64,000 nt of DNA. Source: Octopus sinensis (taxonomy: Eukaryota). The stretch is taken from NCBI RefSeq assembly GCF_006345805.1, contig NC_043010.1:12462001-12526000 (forward strand), given 5' to 3'. The translations under genes and the position numbers were made by a program. Of this stretch, positions 683 through 54,440 are shown piece by piece. Positions within the stretch are counted from its first letter, which is position 1, and every line of letters starts with the position of its first letter. The notes under the pieces are model-generated. The model was not told where the DNA came from. It saw only the letters and a list, made by a program, of their open reading frames with translations, and did no database searches.

Positions 683-935
683 TCTCTTTTACTCTTTTAC
701 TCTTTTACTTGTTTCAGTCATTTGACTGCGGCCAGCCATGCTAGAGCACCGCCTTTAATCGAGCAACTCCACCCCGGGACTTATTCTTTTGTAAGCCCAG
801 CACTTATTCTATCGGTCTCTTTTGCCGAACCGCTAAGTGACGGGGGACGTAAACACACCAGCATCGGTTGTCGAGCAATGCTAGGGGGACAAACACAGAC
901 ACACAAACACATATATATATATATATATATATATA
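683..935 (-). mobile_element. SINE-A, 3' half only, in tandem with the next copy
   Basis: Matches the SINE-A tail and body up to the internal (CA/TA)n linker, then restarts at 947. Confidence 0.9.
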
Positions 936-946
936 CTTTTTTTTTA

Positions 947-1362
947 TTTACTCTTTTTACTTGTTTCAGTCATTTGACTGCGGCCATGCTGGAGCACCAC
1001 CTTTAGTCGAGCAAATCGACCCCGGACTTATACTTTTGTAAGCCCAGTACTTATTCTATCGGTCTCTTTTGCTGAACCGCTAAGTGACGGGGAACGTAAA
1101 CACACCAGCATCAGTTATCAAGCAATACTAGGGGGACAAACACACACACACAAACACATACACAGACACACACATATATATATATATATACATATATACG
1201 ACAGGCTTCTTTCAGTTTCCGTCTACCAAATCCACTCACAAGGCATTGGTCAGCCCGGGGCTATAGCAGAAGACACTTGCCCAAGGTGCCACGCAGTGGG
1301 ACTGAACCTGGAACCATGTGGTTGGTTAGCAAGCTACTTACCACACAGCCACTCCTGCGCCT
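947..1362 (-). mobile_element. SINE-A, full length (tRNA-derived head, CORE-like segment, internal microsatellite, (AAAAGAGT)n tail)
   Basis: Element strand: AGGCGCAGGAGTGGCTGTGTGGTAAG (A-box-like) ... GGTTC(C/A)GGGTTCAGTCCC (B-box-like) ... CCTTGGGCAAGTGTCTT (resembles the MIR/CORE motif, from memory) ... CAGCATGGCCGCAGTCAAATGACTGAAACAAGTAAAAGAG. More than 25 copies or fragments in the window. Confidence 0.93.
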
Positions 1363-3560: not shown

Positions 3561-4124
3561 GCATGCAACTACTCTACAGAACAATGAAATGCATGCTACC
3601 TGCAGCAGAGATGAAACTGAGCTGGAATAATAAAGATCGCCCACAATTCGATTTTATGCATGTATATATATATGTGTGCATGTTGCATGCGTGTGTGTGT
3701 GTGTGTGCATGTGAGCGTGTGTGTGTGATGCATATACATAAAACATGCATAATTTATAATATGGAAATACATATGTGTATATATCTATCTATCAATTTAT
3801 ATCATATATATATATATATAATATATATATACACATATATATATATGTGCACACAGAGAAAGAAAGAGAGAGTAGTATATGTGTATATGCAAAATATATG
3901 GCTGCAGCTCTCAAGCTGAAACCAGAAGGAAAAGTATATACTATATATACATTTTAGAAAAAGATAGTTATGGCCAGTCTATGAGGTCACCCAGGGTTTC
4001 ACAGCCCTAAAGCACTTAGCTTCACAGCATCCCCTCAGACCCTAATGGCCAGTAGCCTATAACCTTCCTTCAAAGTGGAGGAAGAAAAGACCTTGTGGCT
4101 AGTTGTTGAATACATATATATACA

Positions 4125-4280
4125 CTTTTACTCTTTTACTTGTTTCAGTCGGCCATGCTGGAGCACCGCTTCTAGTCGAGCAAATCGACCCCAGGACTTA
4201 TTCTTTGTAAGCCTAGTACTTATTCTATCAGTCTTTTTTGCCAAACCGCTATGTTACGGGGACGTAAACACACCAGCATC
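4125..4280 (-). mobile_element. SINE-A 3' fragment
   Basis: Matches the SINE-A tail and body. Confidence 0.85.
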
Positions 4281-4680
4281 TGTTTTCATAGTTTACTTTG
4301 TACCTTCTCACACTGTTCTGGCTTTCCACAACTATATTCTTTAAACTGTACCTCAAGGTTTCACAAAAAGCATATACATACATATATACATACTTATATA
4401 TATATATATAAGTATGTATGTATGAGATAGTTTTTTCCATCCTTGTTTTTGTATTCATTTGCTTCCTTATTTCCAAGGAATCTAATGCTCTCAGCATAGC
4501 TTTTCCTGGCCAGATTGCAACAATGTCAAGAATAATCAGCTGAAATTGCAAGGATAATCTGGTTCTTGACTGAAGATAGAAAACTTCAAATGACCCATCC
4601 TTGTCTCTGGATGTTTTGTTGTCCCTTTTTGAATCACCTAGTTGTCCGGATGTTTTGCGTTCTTATCCAATTTTGTACTT

Positions 4681-14259: not shown

Positions 14260-14691
14260 TAACTATGTACCTCCTCTACAGCAAGACACCTGTTTCTGTC
14301 TTGCTGTCTCACTATAACCTTTCATCATCTGACACACAATCACCTCCTCCAATGCTCCCACCCCTCTCAAAGGATCTTTGTCTTACAAGTAACTCGGTGA
14401 CCCTATCAGTGCTGGTGCCATGCAAAAAAGCATCCAGTCCACACTGTAAAGTGGTTGGCATTTGGAAGGGCATCCAGCTGTAAAAAATCATGCCAAAACT
14501 GACCTCGCCTGTGCTTGTGCCACATAAAAAGCACTCAGTCCACTCTGTTGGGTGGTTGGTGTTAGGAAGGGCATCCAGCTGTAAAAACCTTGCCAAAACA
14601 GACACAGCAGTCTGGTGCAGGCCCCTATCTAGCCAGCTCCTGTCAAACCATCCAACTCATGCCAGCATGGACATTAAACAACAACGACAAC

Positions 14692-28130: not shown

Positions 28131-28292
28131 ATGGTCCAATTTTGTACATTACACTTGTCCACTCCATCCCCATCAGCCAGTTCATAATTGTCCCCCAAAA
28201 CTCAATTCCATTTCACGGCCCACTCTAACTATGCTTCCAACAACCTCATTTATTTGGATAAAATGTATAAATATAATATACTGGTACTCTAT

Positions 28293-29945
28293 CATCATCA
28301 TTGTTTGACCGTGGTCGAGACAATGGAATTTACCATGCTACTCCAGACTTCACGGTCCATCATAGCATTACGGAGGTCCTGTTGCTGGATACCTGTATCC
28401 CTGGAGATTACATCAGGGTAGGAGAGTGTGCACCCTCTGGTTTCGTGACCGTGGTCGAGACAATGGAATTTACCATGCTACGCCAGACTTCACGGTCCAT
28501 CATAGCATTACGGAGGTCCTGTTGCTGGATACCTGCATCCCTGGAGATTACATCAGGGTAGGAGAGTGTGCACCTTTGGTTTCGCGACCGTGGTCGAGAC
28601 AATGGAATTACCATGCTACGCCAGACTTCACGGTCCATCATAGCATTACGGAGGTCCTGTTGCTGGATACCTGTATCCCTGGAGATTACATCAGGTAGGA
28701 GAGTGTGCACCCTTTGGTTTCGCGACCGTGGTCGAGACAATGGAATTTACCATGCACGCCAGACTTCACGGTCATCATAGCATTAGGAGGTCCTGTTGCT
28801 GGATACCTGTATCCCTGGAGATTACATCAGGGTAGGAGAGTGTGCACCCTCTGGTTTCGTGACCGTGGTCGAGACAATGGAATTTACCATGCTACGCCAG
28901 ACTTCACGGTCCATCATAGCATTACGGAGGTCCTGTTGCTGGATACCTGTATCCCTGGAGATTACATCAGGGTAGGAGAGTGTGCACCCTTTGGTTTTGC
29001 GACCGTGGTCGAGACAATGGAATTTACCATGCTACGCCAGACTTCACGGTCCATCATAGCATTACGGAGGTCCTGTTGCTGGATACCTGTATCCCTGGAG
29101 ATTACATCAGGGTAGGAGAGTGTGCACCCTCTGGTTTCGTGACCGTGGTCGAGACAATGGAATTTACCATGCTACGCCAGACTTCACGGTCCATCATAGC
29201 ATTACGGAGGTCCTGTTGCTGGATACCTGCATCCCTGGAGATTACATCAGGGTAGGAGAGTGTGCACCCTTTGGTTTCGCGACCGTGGTCGAGACAATGG
29301 AATTTACCATGCTACGCCAGACTTCACGGTCCATCATAGCATTACGGAGGTCCTGTTGCTGGATACCTGTATCCCTGGAGATTACATCAGGGTAGGAGAG
29401 TGTGCAGCCTTTGGTTTCGCGACCGTGGTCGAGACAATGGAATTTACCATGCTACGCCAGACTTCACGGTCCATCATAGCATTACGGAGGTCCTGTTGCT
29501 GGATACCTGTATCCCTGGAGATTACATCAGGGTAGGAGAGTGTGCACCCTCTGGTTTCGTGACCGTGGTCGAGACAATGGAATTTACCATGCTACGCCAG
29601 ACTTCACGGTCCATCATAGCATTAGGAGGTCCTGTTGCTGGATACCTGTATCCCGGAGATTACATCAGGGTAGGAGAGTGTGCACCCTTTGGTTCGCGAC
29701 CGTGGTCGAGACAATGGAATTTACCATGCTACGCCAGACTTCACGGTCCATCATAGCATTACGGAGGTCCTGTTGCTGGATACCTGTATCCCTGGAGATT
29801 AAATCAGGGTAGGAGAGTGTGTGCCCTCTGGTATCGCAAGTAGATGGCTTCCAGAGGAGAAGAGCAAAAATTACCTCATTTTCAGCTCTACAACCAATGT
29901 CCAGCAAACTGGACTCTTCTACCTTTCACAAGAGATGGCACTCTA
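28293..29945 (-). mobile_element. RTE-X-type LINE 3' fragment with (TGA)n tail whose last 140 bp is amplified
   Basis: Minus strand reads SLVKGRRVQFAGH(fs)CRAENEVIFALLLWKPS...TLSYPDLISRDTGIQQQDLRNAMMDREVWRSMVNSIVSTTV, ending KQ-TGA-TGA-TGA at 28293; fits the RTE/RTE-X C-terminal RRxxFAGH...LLWxP...DTG...MxDRxxWR pattern. Confidence 0.85.
28307..29837. repeat. Tandem array, 11 units of about 140 bp, derived from an RTE-X LINE 3' end
   Basis: Units start at 28307, 28447, 28586, 28724, 28861, 29001, 29141, 29281, 29421, 29561 and 29698; near-identical; no variable spacers. Confidence 0.98.
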
Positions 29946-30245
29946 ACAGTTATGACGGTGAGTGTTGCAGTTGATCCACTCAATGGAACAGCCTACTTGT
30001 GGAATTAATGTGCAAGCGGCTGAGTACTCCACAGACATGCTTATAATTAACATAGTTACCAGGGGAGATTCAGTGTGACACAGAATGTGACAAGGCTGAC
30101 GTTTTGAAATAGAGGTACAGTTCATTTTGAATTGGAGCAACCTGAAATAAAGTGTCTTGTTCAAGGACATGACAAGCCACCAGGAATCAAACTCAAGACC
30201 TTACAATCCTGAGCTGAATACCCTAACCAATAAGCTACGTACTTT
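29946..30245 (-). mobile_element. Older chimeric SINE: E-type head, D-type tail
   Basis: Head resembles 11230-11339; tail resembles 47965-48150. Confidence 0.72.
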
Positions 30246-30711: not shown

Positions 30712-31092
30712 TCATCATCATCCTCATCATTTAACATTCGTTTTCCATGCTAGCATAGGTTGGACGGTTCGACCGGGGTCTGGGAAGCCAGGTGGCTGCA
30801 CCAAGCTCCAGTCTGATCTGGCAGTGTTTCTACAGCTGGATTCCCTTCCTAACGCCAACCACTTCGTGAGTGTAGTGAGTGCTTTTTACATGCCACCGGC
30901 ACAGGGGCCAGAGGAGGCTGGCAAACGTCCACGATTGGTTGGTGCTTTTTACGTGCCACCGGCATGGACGCCAGTCAAGGCGGCGCTGGCATCAACCACG
31001 TTCAGATGGTGTTTTTTATGTGCCACCGGCACCAGTATCACAACTACAATTTCCGTTTGATTTTTATTTTGATGCTGATGTACTTGACCCAA
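30712..31092 (-). mobile_element. Element C, long copy
   Basis: Element C consensus with three 5' subrepeats. Confidence 0.87.
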
Positions 31093-46925: not shown

Positions 46926-47960
46926 TATAAAGTAGTTGTTTTTTTTAAATCGTTAAACACAGCAATAAAGATTAGTGGTGGCTTTTTTTTAACTCTGTTG
47001 GTGTGTGTGAGATGCCAAAGGACCATGTCTAGTGGCAAAATACTGCAAAGGCTGTTAGATATTAATCTGAGGGTAATTTTAGCCCTGTTTCTAACGAATT
47101 TAAAAGTCACATAGAAGCTCCTTCATTGGCTTGCTGCATAATGTATTACTATGTTGTACTATATCTTACTTAGTTGACTACAAAATCTGGACAGTTTCCT
47201 CAGAGGCACAAGCTTGGTTGAGTAACTGAGGAGCTCGTTGGGCAACCATGTGGTTTCCAGTTCAGACCACAGAGTAGCATCCTGAAGTAAGTGTCTTCTA
47301 CTATAGCCCTTGGCCTACCAATGCCTTGTGAGGGAATTTCGTAGACGGAAACTGTGAAAAAGCCTGTCATGTAAGTGTATGAAAGGTGAAGTCAACCTCG
47401 GTGGAATTTGAACTCAGAATGTAAAGACAGATAAAATGTTGTCAAGCACTCTGTCCAGCAGGCTAACAATTCTGCCAGCTCACCACCTTAATAATGATAA
47501 TAACAATAACAATAATAATAATAAAGATAATTTCTCAATCATACATAATATCACTAATTTGTTGGGAAGGGTTGTAGGAAGGAAATGTATTACAATTTTC
47601 TTTTTATATAAAAACCAGTGAAAGCTTTTGATCTCACTTGTAGCCATCTCCAAAGACGAGGTGTTAAGCTAATGTCAGCATCAGTGTGTCAGTGGTAAAA
47701 TACAAGAAACATAGCGAACGGCATCGCTTCTTTAATAACTTAAGCTGAAGGATGCGAATGAGTGATTGATTGGCTTAAAGTAGGCTGTCGTGTTTGTGAT
47801 TGACTGGTGATCAGAGTATTGATTACACTGATTGAACTTATCTATATTCAAAGGCATGCTGAGACAATGCTTTTTTTTTTTTTTTTTTTTTTAAGAAAGT
47901 AGGATGTAAAATGGGGGGAGAGATTTAGCTGCTATTTTTAGCAGAACTGAGCAGTTATGT

Positions 47961-48344
47961 GGGAAGCACTCCGTCGGTTACGACGACGAGGGTTCCGGTT
48001 GATCCGAATCAACGGAACAGCCTGCTCGTGAAATTAACGTGTAAGTGGCTGAGCACTCCACAGACACGTGTACCCTTAACGTAGTTCTCGGGGATATTCA
48101 GCGTGACACAGAGAGTGACAAGGCCGGCCCCTTGAAATACAGGTACAACAGAAACAGGAAGTAAGAGTGAGAGAAAGCTGTGGTGAAAGAGTACAGCAGG
48201 GATCACCACCATCCCCTGCCGGAGCCTCGTGGAGCTTTTAGGTGTTTTCGCTCAATAAACACTCACAAAGCCCGGTCTGGGAATCGAAATCGCGATCCTA
48301 TGACCACGAGTCCACTGCCCTAACCACTGGGCCATTGTGCCTCC
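47961..48344 (-). mobile_element. SINE-D, full length, perfect 15-bp TSD ACTGAGCAGTTATGT (47946-47960 and 48345-48359)
   Basis: Element strand: GGAGGCACAATGGCCCAGTGGTTAGGGC (A box) ... GATTTCGATTCCC (B box); TSD read directly. Confidence 0.93.
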
Positions 48345-48604
48345 ACTGAGCAGTTATGTAGTGACCCCTTCACTCACAATGTCATAAAGAGTGAAAGAAA
48401 AGTAATGCATAAAGGACTTTAATCTATGTTCTTAATTTTTTTAAATATTTTTATAAATTACTAGTTTTAATTTTTTAATGCTGGAAAATAGTATTTTTTT
48501 CATCAATCATCTTTTACTGGCTTCACTCATTAGACTGCATACTGGGACCACCACCTTGAAGAATTTTAGTTGAACAACCCCTGTTCTTGTTTATTTATTT
48601 ATTT

Positions 48605-49335: not shown

Positions 49336-49751
49336 TATTTCTTTATTGCCCACAAAGGGCTGAACATAGAGGGGACAAACAAGGACAGACAAAGAGATTA
49401 AGTCAATTACATCGACCCCAGTATGTAACTGGTACTTATTTAATCGACCCCGAAAGGATGAAAGGCAAAGCTGACCTTGGCAGAATTTGAACTCAAAACG
49501 TAACGGCAGATGAAATACCTATTTCTTTACTACCCACAAGGGGCTAAACACAGAGAGGACAAACAAGGACAGACAAACGGATTAAGTCGATTATATCGAC
49601 CCCAGTGCGTAACTGGTACTTATTTAATCGACCCCGAAAGGATGAAAGGCAAAGTTGCCCTCAGCAGAATTTGAACTCAGAACGTAACAGCAGATGAAAT
49701 ACATCTAAAGCATTTCGCCCGGCGTGCTAACATTTCTGCTAGCTCGCCGCC
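49336..49751 (-). mobile_element. SINE-B tandem dimer inserted into an older SINE-A, 11-bp TSD TTTCAATTTCT
   Basis: TSD at 49325-49335 and 49752-49762; host SINE-A continues on both sides (about 49255-49900). Confidence 0.9.
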
Positions 49752-54084: not shown

Positions 54085-54440
54085 GCCGTTGCCAGTTACC
54101 AGTGCCGCCTCGACTGGCCTCCATGCCGGTGGCACGTAAAAAGCACCATCCGATCGTGACCGTTACCAGCCTTGCCTGGTCCCCCGTGCCAGTGGCACAT
54201 AAAAAGCACCATCCGTCCGTGGCCGTTTGCCAGCCCCGTCTGGCCCCTGTGCTGGTGGCACATAAAAAGCACCCACTACTGATGGAGTGGTTGGCGTTAG
54301 AAAGGGCATCCAGCTGTAGAAACATTGCCAGATCAGACTGGGCCTGGTGCAGCCTTCTGGCTTGCCAGACCCCAGTTGAACCGTCCAACCCATGCTAGCA
54401 TGGAAAGCGGACGCTAAACGATGAGGATGATGATGATGAT
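54085..54440 (+). mobile_element. Element C with three 5' subrepeats and (GAT)n tail
   Basis: Element C consensus. Confidence 0.88.

What the first reader, a model, noticed from the sequence alone, without database searches (positions are those of the whole stretch)
28293..29945. Satellite being born from a LINE 3' end: 11 x 140-bp RTE-X terminal array
Seen: a unique RTE-X fragment runs into 11 near-identical copies of its last 140 bp and ends in a single (TGA)n tail. Each unit stops just before the stop codon and tail and restarts at TRG/NQR-VHTLSYPD. Each unit retains a potential 3' stem-loop (GACCGTG...CACGGTC enclosing ATGG/CCAT). 140 is not divisible by 3, so there is no repeat protein. 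Inference: reiterative template jumping during reverse transcription, rolling-circle copying of a small circle, or later unequal exchange. A transcript would display 11 RT-recognition signals and could act as a decoy or super-template.
Basis: partly seen in the sequence, partly recalled or inferred. Interest (0 to 1): 0.8.

Follow-up and report, generated by a model that had tools for sequence, protein, structure and literature searches.

The report
Eleven-copy repeat of a LINE tail
A short, broken copy of an RTE-type jumping gene has had its last 140 bases copied head-to-tail eleven times, most likely by ordinary DNA mis-pairing after it landed; it is a clean small example of how repeat arrays start from mobile elements, but not a new kind of thing.

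Summary
On the minus strand, a 5'-truncated RTE-type LINE fragment (29935..29838) runs into 11.0 copies of a 140-bp unit (29837..28307). It ends in AAACAA + (TGA)3 (28306..28292) and is flanked by a 9/10 target-site duplication. The unit encodes the last ~46 codons of the LINE ORF. Twenty-one related elements carry this segment once, directly followed by their microsatellite tail.

The array does not look like a single reverse-transcription event:
- Unit 1 is an outlier (5.5 versus 2.0 substitutions).
- Units 2-11 share derived changes that unit 1 lacks.
- Variants repeat every five units (permutation p about 0.01), so units 2-6 and 7-11 look like a 700-bp block duplication.
- No tail sequence lies between units.

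This fits stepwise DNA-level duplication (unequal exchange or slippage). I could not tell whether that happened here or in a source copy.

The 3' hairpin can form, but it is weak (z = -1.7) and has no covariation support. No second locus of this family was reachable.

Nine 1-bp deletions against three private substitutions suggest unpolished assembly. A gecko BovB-like copy has the same layout (5 x 156 bp).

Verdict: a new member of a known kind, a transposon-derived tandem array.

The parts
29936..29945 (-). Upstream copy of the candidate target-site duplication, TAGAGTGCCA. It is also the last 10 nt of a tRNA-derived SINE.
   Evidence: Read from the sequence. SINE homology ends here. It matches 28291..28282 at 9 of 10 positions.
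29838..29935 (-). Unique part of the 5'-truncated RTE-type LINE copy. It encodes ..SLVKGRRVQFAGHW, then a frameshift, then KVEESSLLDIGCRAENEVIFALLLWKPST.
   Evidence: Translations. Homology to the C-terminal tails of APE+RT LINE ORFs. There is a 1-bp difference in length relative to L001.
28307..29837 (-). Array of 11 units of 140 bp (U1 at 29837..29698 through U11 at 28446..28307). Each unit holds the last ~46 codons of the LINE ORF up to ..STTV.
   Evidence: TRF, unit BLAST, and unit tables.
29698..29837 (-). U1, the edge unit contiguous with the unique fragment. It is the most divergent unit. It keeps ancestral-looking GAT..CAC (D..H) and has its own derived G>T change (DVI to DLI).
   Evidence: 5.5 substitutions to the other units versus 2.0 among U2-U11. 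Comparison with relatives.
29001..29697 (-). Block U2-U6, the first copy of a five-unit (about 700 bp) higher-order duplication.
   Evidence: Substitutions between units five apart are 1, 0, 1, 0, 1. Permutation p is about 0.01.
28307..29000 (-). Block U7-U11, the second copy of the five-unit duplication.
28292..28306 (-). Last two codons AAA CAA (K Q) followed by (TGA)3. The first TGA is the ORF stop codon and the start of the microsatellite tail. This segment is present only once.
   Evidence: Sequence. Relatives end the same way, GTC GAA CAA (TGA)n.
28282..28291 (-). Downstream copy of the candidate target-site duplication, TAGAGTACCA.
   Evidence: Sequence. It matches 29945..29936 at 9 of 10 positions.
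29936..30243 (-). tRNA-derived SINE. The RTE copy inserted into its 3' end. This is context, not part of the array.
   Evidence: Similarity to other copies in the window. Alignment with the copy at 48344..47961.

Best explanation
A short 5'-truncated copy of an RTE-type LINE (about 240 bp plus a (TGA)n tail) inserted by target-primed reverse transcription into the 3' end of a SINE.

Later, at the DNA level, its terminal 140 bp were duplicated once. This segment runs from inside the codon before D-T-R-G to the codon for the last V, six bases before the stop codon. The dimer then grew stepwise by unequal sister-chromatid exchange or replication slippage between misaligned units. The most recent step duplicated a five-unit, 700-bp block.

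The result is a 1.5-kb transposon-derived tandem array (minisatellite-sized) with no coding function of its own.

Shown:
- the anatomy of the locus;
- the LINE identity of the unit;
- single-copy 3' ends in relatives;
- the absence of tail sequence at junctions;
- the outlier status of the edge unit;
- the five-unit periodicity.

Inferred:
- that the duplications happened at this locus rather than in a source copy;
- the recombination or slippage mechanism itself.
For: Identity of the unit:
- It is the C-terminal tail of a LINE ORF. There are 126 HMMER hits, the best at 68% identity.
- Relatives carry this tail after RVT_1 (P0012), or after an APE-type endonuclease plus RVT_1 (L001).
- All 21 related loci have the segment once, followed directly by (TGA)n or (TGT)n. 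The array is therefore a derived state.

Insertion:
- A 9/10 10-bp duplication flanks the whole element, as expected for a TPRT insertion. It starts with T, as reported for RTE-related insertions (PMC6007223).

Stepwise history:
- U1 differs from the other units by 5.5 substitutions on average, versus 2.0 among U2-U11.
- U2-U11 share three changes (T>A, CA>TG) that relatives suggest are derived (RGH in P0003, D-x-T-RG in P0004).
- U1 alone has DLI instead of the conserved DVI.
- Units five apart differ by only 0-1 substitutions (permutation p about 0.01), and three variant sites each repeat with period five.

Phase and junctions:
- The array is colinear and in phase with both flanks.
- All ten junctions are at the same position with 0-1 nt of microhomology and no tail.

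Precedent:
- Tandem arrays derived from LINE 3' ends and ORF2 pieces, and the model of initial duplication, then amplification, then homogenisation, are documented (PMC9659126; PMC10702118).
Against: - No other genome copy of this RTE family could be examined, so an array already present in the source element is not excluded.
- The five-unit periodicity rests on only three variant sites. Its permutation p is about 0.01, not overwhelming.
- Nine 1-bp deletions, no insertions and only three private substitutions in U2-U11 point to consensus errors. Fine details, and possibly the copy number, are therefore uncertain.
- An independent gecko locus with the same layout could hint at a mechanism specific to RTE elements rather than generic DNA mis-pairing.
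Confidence: 0.55

Rival explanations
1. The array already existed in a source RTE element, having evolved there by the same DNA-level steps, and was copied here as part of a 1.64-kb 5'-truncated retrotransposition. Arrays of this unit would then be dispersed and mobile.
For: - The target-site duplication encloses the fragment, array and tail as one unit.
- An array-bearing element could remain functional. Reading from U1 into U2 only replaces the final KQ with about 10 residues before a stop, and the last unit plus tail keeps an intact 3' end.
- From my own knowledge, Bouneau et al. 2003 proposed that a non-LTR element can retrotranspose as a partial tandem array. Only the title of that paper was seen here (reference lists of PMC6274825 and PMC7599744).
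Against: - No second copy was found in the window.
- No array-type protein of this family appears among 1.84 billion representatives.
- Scans of metagenome and viral contigs found nothing. These collections probably do not contain this genome, so this is weak evidence.
- Very short 5'-truncated copies are the commonest class of LINE insertion, which slightly favours a 240-bp original.
Confidence: 0.2
2. The RTE reverse transcriptase made the array during insertion. It would have done so by repeatedly dissociating 140 nt upstream and re-priming near the 3' end of the same or another RNA (template jumping or slippage).
For: - Non-LTR RTs do template-jump and give head-to-tail copies in vitro and in cells (PMC11371274).
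- All junctions are identical in position.
- A second RTE-class copy in a gecko has the same layout: unique fragment, array, last codons, single tail.
Against: - Junctions lack the tail and the terminal AAACAA, whereas jumps go to the 3' end of a template.
- There is no usable microhomology at the junction (0-1 nt).
- Units are not star-like. U1 is an outlier, U2-U11 share derived changes, and variants recur in the same order every five units. A single RT event on one template cannot produce this.
Confidence: 0.1
3. Assembly artefact. The true locus has fewer units, and the assembler expanded or duplicated part of the array, for example the 700-bp block.
For: - Nine single-base deletions, no insertions and only three private substitutions among U2-U11. 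This profile is typical of an unpolished long-read consensus.
- The two five-unit blocks are nearly identical.
Against: - Units carry real, patterned substitutions (types A, B and B*), and the edge unit is distinct.
- Long-read assemblers seldom invent a tandem array from one copy.
- The 1.5-kb array is far shorter than typical long reads.
Confidence: 0.1
4. Repeated tail-targeted insertions (the 'double insertion' route), or reintegration of a rolling-circle copy of a 140-bp circle.
For: - Tail-to-head RTE dimers do exist in relatives (P0057, P0111 and P0054 have WWWW, i.e. (TGA)n, between two C-termini).
- Double insertion is a documented route to tandem transposon dimers (PMC5932611).
Against: - No tail and no target-site duplication lies between any two units.
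- Every unit starts at the same internal position.
- The array is in phase with both flanks, which a reintegrated concatemer would not be unless it entered by homologous recombination.
Confidence: 0.03

Closest known systems
Tandem repeats or satellites derived from LINE 3' ends or ORF2 pieces. Examples in the review PMC9659126: chicken HinfI repeat from the CR1 3' UTR plus partial ORF2; common cetacean satellite from the L1 3' end; Drosophila 18HT from the HeT-A 3' region; PROsat and Pvc20 from L1 ORF2.
   Same: A segment at the 3' end of a non-LTR retrotransposon, including coding sequence, is amplified head-to-tail.
   Different: Those are abundant, multi-locus satellites. This is one 11-unit, 1.5-kb locus still embedded in its parent insertion, with target-site duplications and tail intact. 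It derives from an RTE-type element in what looks like a cephalopod genome (species inferred, not tested).
SINE-derived satellites of squamates and their short 'nucleus' loci (PMC10702118)
   Same: Short arrays of four or more units made from part of a retroposon, including LINE-derived 3' regions. The same staged model applies: initial duplication, amplification, homogenisation.
   Different: The source here is a LINE coding 3' end, not a SINE. No evidence was obtained of further loci or of homogenisation between loci.
Gekko kuhli BovB-like locus L022 (gene model KAL8177479.1)
   Same: The same architecture in another RTE-class element: a 5'-truncated unique fragment, then 5.0 x 156-bp units of the ORF C-terminus, then the last 10 codons and a single microsatellite tail, TAA(CAA)n. 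No tail lies between units.
   Different: Different lineage and host. The unit is a multiple of 3, so it reads as a repeat protein. The unit stops 30 nt rather than 6 nt before the stop codon. There are 2 nt of junction microhomology.
Template-jump concatemers of R2-type reverse transcriptases (PMC11371274)
   Same: Head-to-tail copies of a retroelement 3' region made by a non-LTR RT.
   Different: Those junctions join a cDNA end to the 3' end of the next template. Here the junction skips the tail and the last 6 nt, and the units have a stepwise history.
Tandem transposon dimers by double insertion (PMC5932611), and the tail-to-head RTE dimers seen in P0057, P0111 and P0054
   Same: Two or more 3' ends of the same element lie in tandem, giving a possible seed for satellites.
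   Different: Those keep a tail between copies. The window array has none.
[quoted passage not shown] 2003). Only the title was seen, in reference lists; the paper is not held and its content is from my own memory.
   Same: A non-LTR element with partial tandem duplication that may be carried through retrotransposition.
   Different: It is a different clade with a restriction-enzyme-like endonuclease, and it occurs at multiple loci. Whether the window array is carried through retrotransposition is unknown.

Membership tests
RTE-clade LINE (3' fragment) | Full-length members encode one ORF with an N-terminal APE-type endonuclease and a reverse transcriptase. | tested here: met
   Tested on a relative, not on this truncated copy. 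The 818-aa ORF of L001 has Exo_endo_phos_2 plus RVT_1, followed by a C-terminal tail 67% identical to the window peptide. P0012 has RVT_1 followed by the same tail.
RTE-clade LINE (3' fragment) | Conserved C-terminal tail of the ORF (RRxxFAGH..R...E.I...LLW.P....R.....P..I.RD.G....DL...M.DR..W). | tested here: met
   HMMER gave 126 hits with E <= 1e-3. Alignments A1 and A2 have 11-19 invariant columns. A BovB-like gecko protein is also hit (P0088, E = 5e-5).
RTE-clade LINE (3' fragment) | Very short or absent 3' UTR ending in a short-unit microsatellite instead of poly(A). | tested here: met
   The ORF stop codon is the first TGA of (TGA)3. Relatives do the same. [quoted passage not shown]
RTE-clade LINE (3' fragment) | Target-site duplication flanking the insertion. 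| tested here: met
   TAGAGTGCCA (29945..29936) versus TAGAGTACCA (28291..28282) match at 9 of 10 positions. My rough estimate of the chance expectation, allowing for boundary freedom, is about 4e-3.
RTE-X subgroup specifically | RT-domain phylogeny placing the element with RTE-X rather than RTE or BovB reference elements. | not testable with these tools
   This copy has no RT domain.
Satellite DNA | Head-to-tail tandem organisation of a monomer. | tested here: met
   11.0 copies of 140 bp.
Satellite DNA | High copy number, long arrays, or several loci in the genome. | tested here: inconclusive
   Only one 1.5-kb array was seen. There is no other copy in the 64-kb window. Searches outside found nothing, but the source genome itself could not be searched.
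RT template-jump concatemer | Junctions join the copied 5' end of one template to the 3' terminus, including the tail, of the next. | tested here: not met
   All ten junctions read GGTC|RCGAAACC, without AAACAA or TGA repeats.
RT template-jump concatemer | Units made in one event are equally related to each other (star-like). | tested here: not met
   U1 is an outlier, U2-U11 share derived changes, and there is a five-unit periodicity.
Structured 3' recognition element of stringent LINEs | A conserved stem-loop supported by compensatory changes. | tested here: inconclusive
   The hairpin folds at -19.8 kcal/mol with z = -1.7. The whole unit has z = -0.36. In 10 relatives 76% of cells pair, but covariation is 0.131 versus 0.135 in shuffles. 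The stem lies in coding sequence (DRE and TTV codons), so conservation is explained without invoking structure.

The most novel reading that the evidence does not exclude
RTE-class reverse transcriptases recurrently generate tail-less arrays of the sub-terminal ORF segment while copying their own 3' end. Such array-bearing copies stay mobile, because the last unit plus tail is intact and the ORF loses only two codons. This would make RTE elements a direct, RT-driven source of dispersed satellite seeds. The octopus-like locus and the gecko BovB locus would then be two instances of one mechanism.
Probability: 0.1. Interest if true: 0.65.

Novelty: new member of a known kind. Interest (0 to 1): 0.3.

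Why it matters
Arrays that are still embedded in their parent insertion are rare snapshots of the first steps from transposon to satellite. Here the target-site duplications, the unique upstream fragment and the single tail are all intact, so the order of events can be read from the units themselves: one duplication, then divergence, then amplification, then a block duplication.

If a genome-wide search showed that the same junction occurs at many loci, the finding would gain weight as a mobile array. As it stands, it is a well-preserved but ordinary example. It also flags a stretch of probably unpolished assembly.

Tried and rejected
Searches for the same family elsewhere:
- A word-indexed protein search with the 78-aa C-terminus returned no candidates. 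The index evidently misses some proteins that the exhaustive search later found, so this negative is weak.
- An exact look-up of the plus-strand 136-aa ORF inside the array found nothing on record.
- A 27-mer scan of JGI metagenome contigs and of viral contigs gave 0 hits each.
- The exhaustive HMMER search found only relatives at 68% identity or less.
- None of these collections seems to hold the source genome, so 'unique locus' is not established.

Other checks that led nowhere:
- Rfam, tRNA and Pfam scans of the window and its larger ORFs gave no hits.
- Covariation test of the hairpin gave no signal.
- TRF on the 21 metagenome-derived related loci (L001-L021) found no 3'-end arrays. These are short-read metagenome assemblies that would collapse arrays.
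- The Bouneau 2003 paper could not be read.

Rejected explanations:
- Double insertion, because no tail lies between units.
- Rolling circle, because the array is in phase with both flanks.
- A repeat protein, because the frame rotates and meets stops.

Full report
**1. The observation**

Tandem Repeats Finder reports one array at 28307..29837: period 140, 11.0 copies, 96% matches, score 2873. A BLAST of one unit against the window finds the 11 copies at 97-100% identity and nothing else.

The element reads on the minus strand. In 5' to 3' order it consists of:
- a 98-bp unique fragment (29935..29838);
- units U1 to U11 (starts 29837, 29697, 29560, 29420, 29280, 29140, 29000, 28860, 28723, 28585, 28446; end 28307);
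- AAACAA TGA TGA TGA (28306..28292).

All ten internal junctions read ...CCACGGTC|RCGAAACC... No tail and no AAACAA lies between units.

**2. What the unit is**

In the coding frame, the fragment plus a unit reads ..VKGRRVQFAGHW / KVEESSLLDIGCRAENEVIFALLLWKPSTCDTRGHTLSYPD(V/L)ISRDTGIQQQDLRNAMMDREVWRSMVNSIVSTTV. Only the last unit continues to KQ-stop, and that stop codon is the first TGA of the tail.

An exhaustive HMMER search of 1.84 billion representative proteins gave 126 hits, the best at 68% identity. The hits are C-terminal ends of LINE ORFs:
- P0012 has RVT_1 followed by this tail.
- The 818-aa ORF on contig L001 has an APE-type endonuclease domain plus RVT_1, followed by the tail. It matches L1 and R2 proteins in the PDB.

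Many hits read '...STAVEQWWWW'. This is the (TGA)n tail translated with TGA as Trp.

In 21 related loci from marine metagenomes the DNA ends ...TCGACCnnGGTC GAnnA (TGA)n, or (TGT)n, and then passes into unrelated flank. The segment occurs once in each. This matches published descriptions:
- RTE elements are described as having a microsatellite at the ORF end, including an octopus RTE (PMC9115989).
- The related Rex3 element has its stop codon 3 nt before the tail repeats (PMC6274825).

So the unit is the last ~46 codons of an RTE-type LINE, and the array is a derived state. RTE-X versus RTE could not be tested.

**3. The insertion**

Upstream on the minus strand lies a tRNA-derived SINE (30243..29936). 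Other copies of it exist in the window. Its last 10 nt, TAGAGTGCCA (29945..29936), recur as TAGAGTACCA (28291..28282) directly after the tail. This is a 9/10 target-site duplication enclosing fragment, array and tail. It starts with T, as reported for RTE-related insertions (PMC6007223).

The unique fragment carries a 1-bp length difference relative to L001, which breaks the frame. The copy is therefore dead as a gene.

**4. History written in the units**

These results come from a corrected alignment.

- U1, the edge unit, differs from the others by 5.5 substitutions on average. U2-U11 differ among themselves by 2.0.
- U2-U11 share T>A and CA>TG changes. Relatives (RGH in P0003, D-x-T-RG in P0004) suggest that U1 keeps the older state at these sites.
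- U1 alone has DLI in place of the conserved DVI.
- Three variable sites (columns 1, 10, 51) give the order G-type, A, B, B*, A, B, A, B, B*, A from U1 on.
- Units five apart differ by only 1, 0, 1, 0, 1 substitutions. The lag-5 mean is 0.6, against 1.6-2.7 at other short lags (1-4, 6 and 7). Permutation p is about 0.01, also after taking the best lag.

The simplest reading is a sequence of steps: a founder duplication, a period of divergence, amplification of the second unit's lineage, and finally a duplication of a five-unit block (U2-U6 and U7-U11, about 700 bp). A single reverse-transcription event on one template would give equally related units in no repeated order.

**5. Mechanisms compared**

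- *Template jumping.* It is real for non-LTR RTs and yields head-to-tail copies (PMC11371274). But a jump lands on the 3' end of a template. Here the tail and the last 6 nt are absent from every junction, and microhomology is 0-1 nt.
- *Double insertion* (PMC5932611). It leaves a tail between copies. I see exactly that in relatives P0057, P0111 and P0054, but not in the window.
- *A reintegrated rolling-circle product.* It would not be in phase with both flanks.
- *Unequal exchange or slippage.* It explains the phase, the identical junctions, the divergent edge unit and the block duplication. It is also the standard route from transposon segment to tandem array (PMC9659126; PMC10702118).

What I cannot decide is whether these steps happened here or in a source element that was then copied. 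An array-bearing element would lose only the final KQ of its ORF and would keep an intact 3' end, so it could still move.

**6. The hairpin**

GACCGTG...CACGGTC with inner ATGG...CCAT is present in each unit.

- The terminal 52 nt fold at -19.8 kcal/mol, z = -1.7, and 13 of 200 shuffles fold as well.
- A whole unit plus tail is unremarkable, z = -0.36.
- Across 10 relatives 76% of cells pair, but the covariation score equals that of the shuffled controls (0.131 versus 0.135).
- The arms are codons for DRE and TTV, so coding constraint explains their conservation.

The hairpin is possible but unproven. The 'eleven recognition signals, decoy or super-template' idea has no support.

**7. Assembly quality**

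Among U2-U11 there are nine single-base deletions, no insertions and only three private substitutions. That ratio is typical of consensus errors in long-read assemblies where repeats resist polishing. The array is very likely real, since the substitutions are patterned and the edge unit is distinct. The exact copy number and the small indels need read-level confirmation.

**8. A parallel**

One HMMER hit, P0088, is a Gekko kuhli gene model (KAL8177479.1). Its locus (L022) shows:
- a 5'-truncated BovB-like fragment;
- then 5.0 x 156-bp units of the ORF C-terminus (3571..4352);
- then the last ten codons and a single TAA(CAA)n tail.

This is the same layout in a distant RTE-class element. It shows that the pattern is not unique. 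It also leaves a small chance of an RTE-specific cause.

**9. Verdict**

The locus is a new member of a known kind, a tandem array derived from a LINE 3' end. It is preserved at an early, legible stage. Interest is modest (0.3). It would rise if the junction proved to be dispersed in the genome.

Noticed in passing
window 28307..29697 (units U2, U8, U9, U10): All nine length differences between units are 1-bp deletions, and there are no insertions. Several lie in short homopolymers, and one (CCGTAAT to CCTAAT) is shared by U2 and U8. With only three private substitutions, this looks like unpolished long-read consensus error inside the repeat.
   Followed up: partly
L022 3571..4352 (Gekko kuhli CM122937.1, 7,216,076-7,223,455): Five 156-bp tandem units of a BovB-like RTE ORF C-terminus lie between a unique 5'-truncated fragment and the last 10 codons plus a TAA(CAA)n tail. 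The locus is annotated as hypothetical protein KAL8177479.1. The architecture is the same as in the window.
   Followed up: partly
proteins P0057, P0111, P0054, P0042 (ENA contigs): Two RTE C-termini lie in tandem with a (TGA)n tail, read as WWWW, between them in P0057, P0111 and P0054. This suggests that new copies insert at the tail of older copies. P0042 instead has about 30 residues of unrelated sequence between its two copies and a tail only after the second.
   Followed up: no
window 47946..48359 (minus strand): A complete tRNA-derived SINE (48344..47961) is flanked by a perfect 15-bp target-site duplication, ACATAACTGCTCAGT (48359..48345 and 47960..47946). It has no simple-repeat tail. 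It belongs to the same family as the SINE that the RTE copy hit.
   Followed up: partly
window 696..1160: A 247-bp unit is present 1.9 times (90% matches). From memory the sequence resembles the abundant octopus SINE. This is my only basis for calling the window cephalopod, and it was not tested.
   Followed up: no
window 14409..14603, 30879..31048, 54107..54273: Short local tandem duplications (periods 101, about 65 and 63 bp). The 30879 and 54107 arrays contain a GTGCCACCGGCAC-type motif (reverse-complemented at 54107), and 14409 a looser GTGCTGGTGCCAGCA version. They appear to be internal repeats of another interspersed element. One lies 900 bp from the array.
   Followed up: no
window 49336..49702: A 184-bp unit is present 2.0 times at 90% identity. 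This is another two-copy tandem duplication of interspersed-repeat-like sequence.
   Followed up: no
window 28705..29115 (plus strand): A 136-aa ORF runs antisense through about three units of the array. It is a mechanical by-product of the repeat, and no matching protein is on record.
   Followed up: yes
L016 18..262 and L020 122..395: A 67-bp tandem repeat (3.7 and 4.1 copies, 96-98% matches) lies about 2 kb upstream of the matched C-terminal tail in two related marine-metagenome LINE contigs. These may be 5'-region repeats of that element.
   Followed up: no
tool behaviour, versus 29 and 37: The word-indexed protein search missed P0001-P0003. These share eight or more 5-residue words with the query and were found by the exhaustive search. 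Negatives from the indexed search should therefore be read cautiously.
   Followed up: partly
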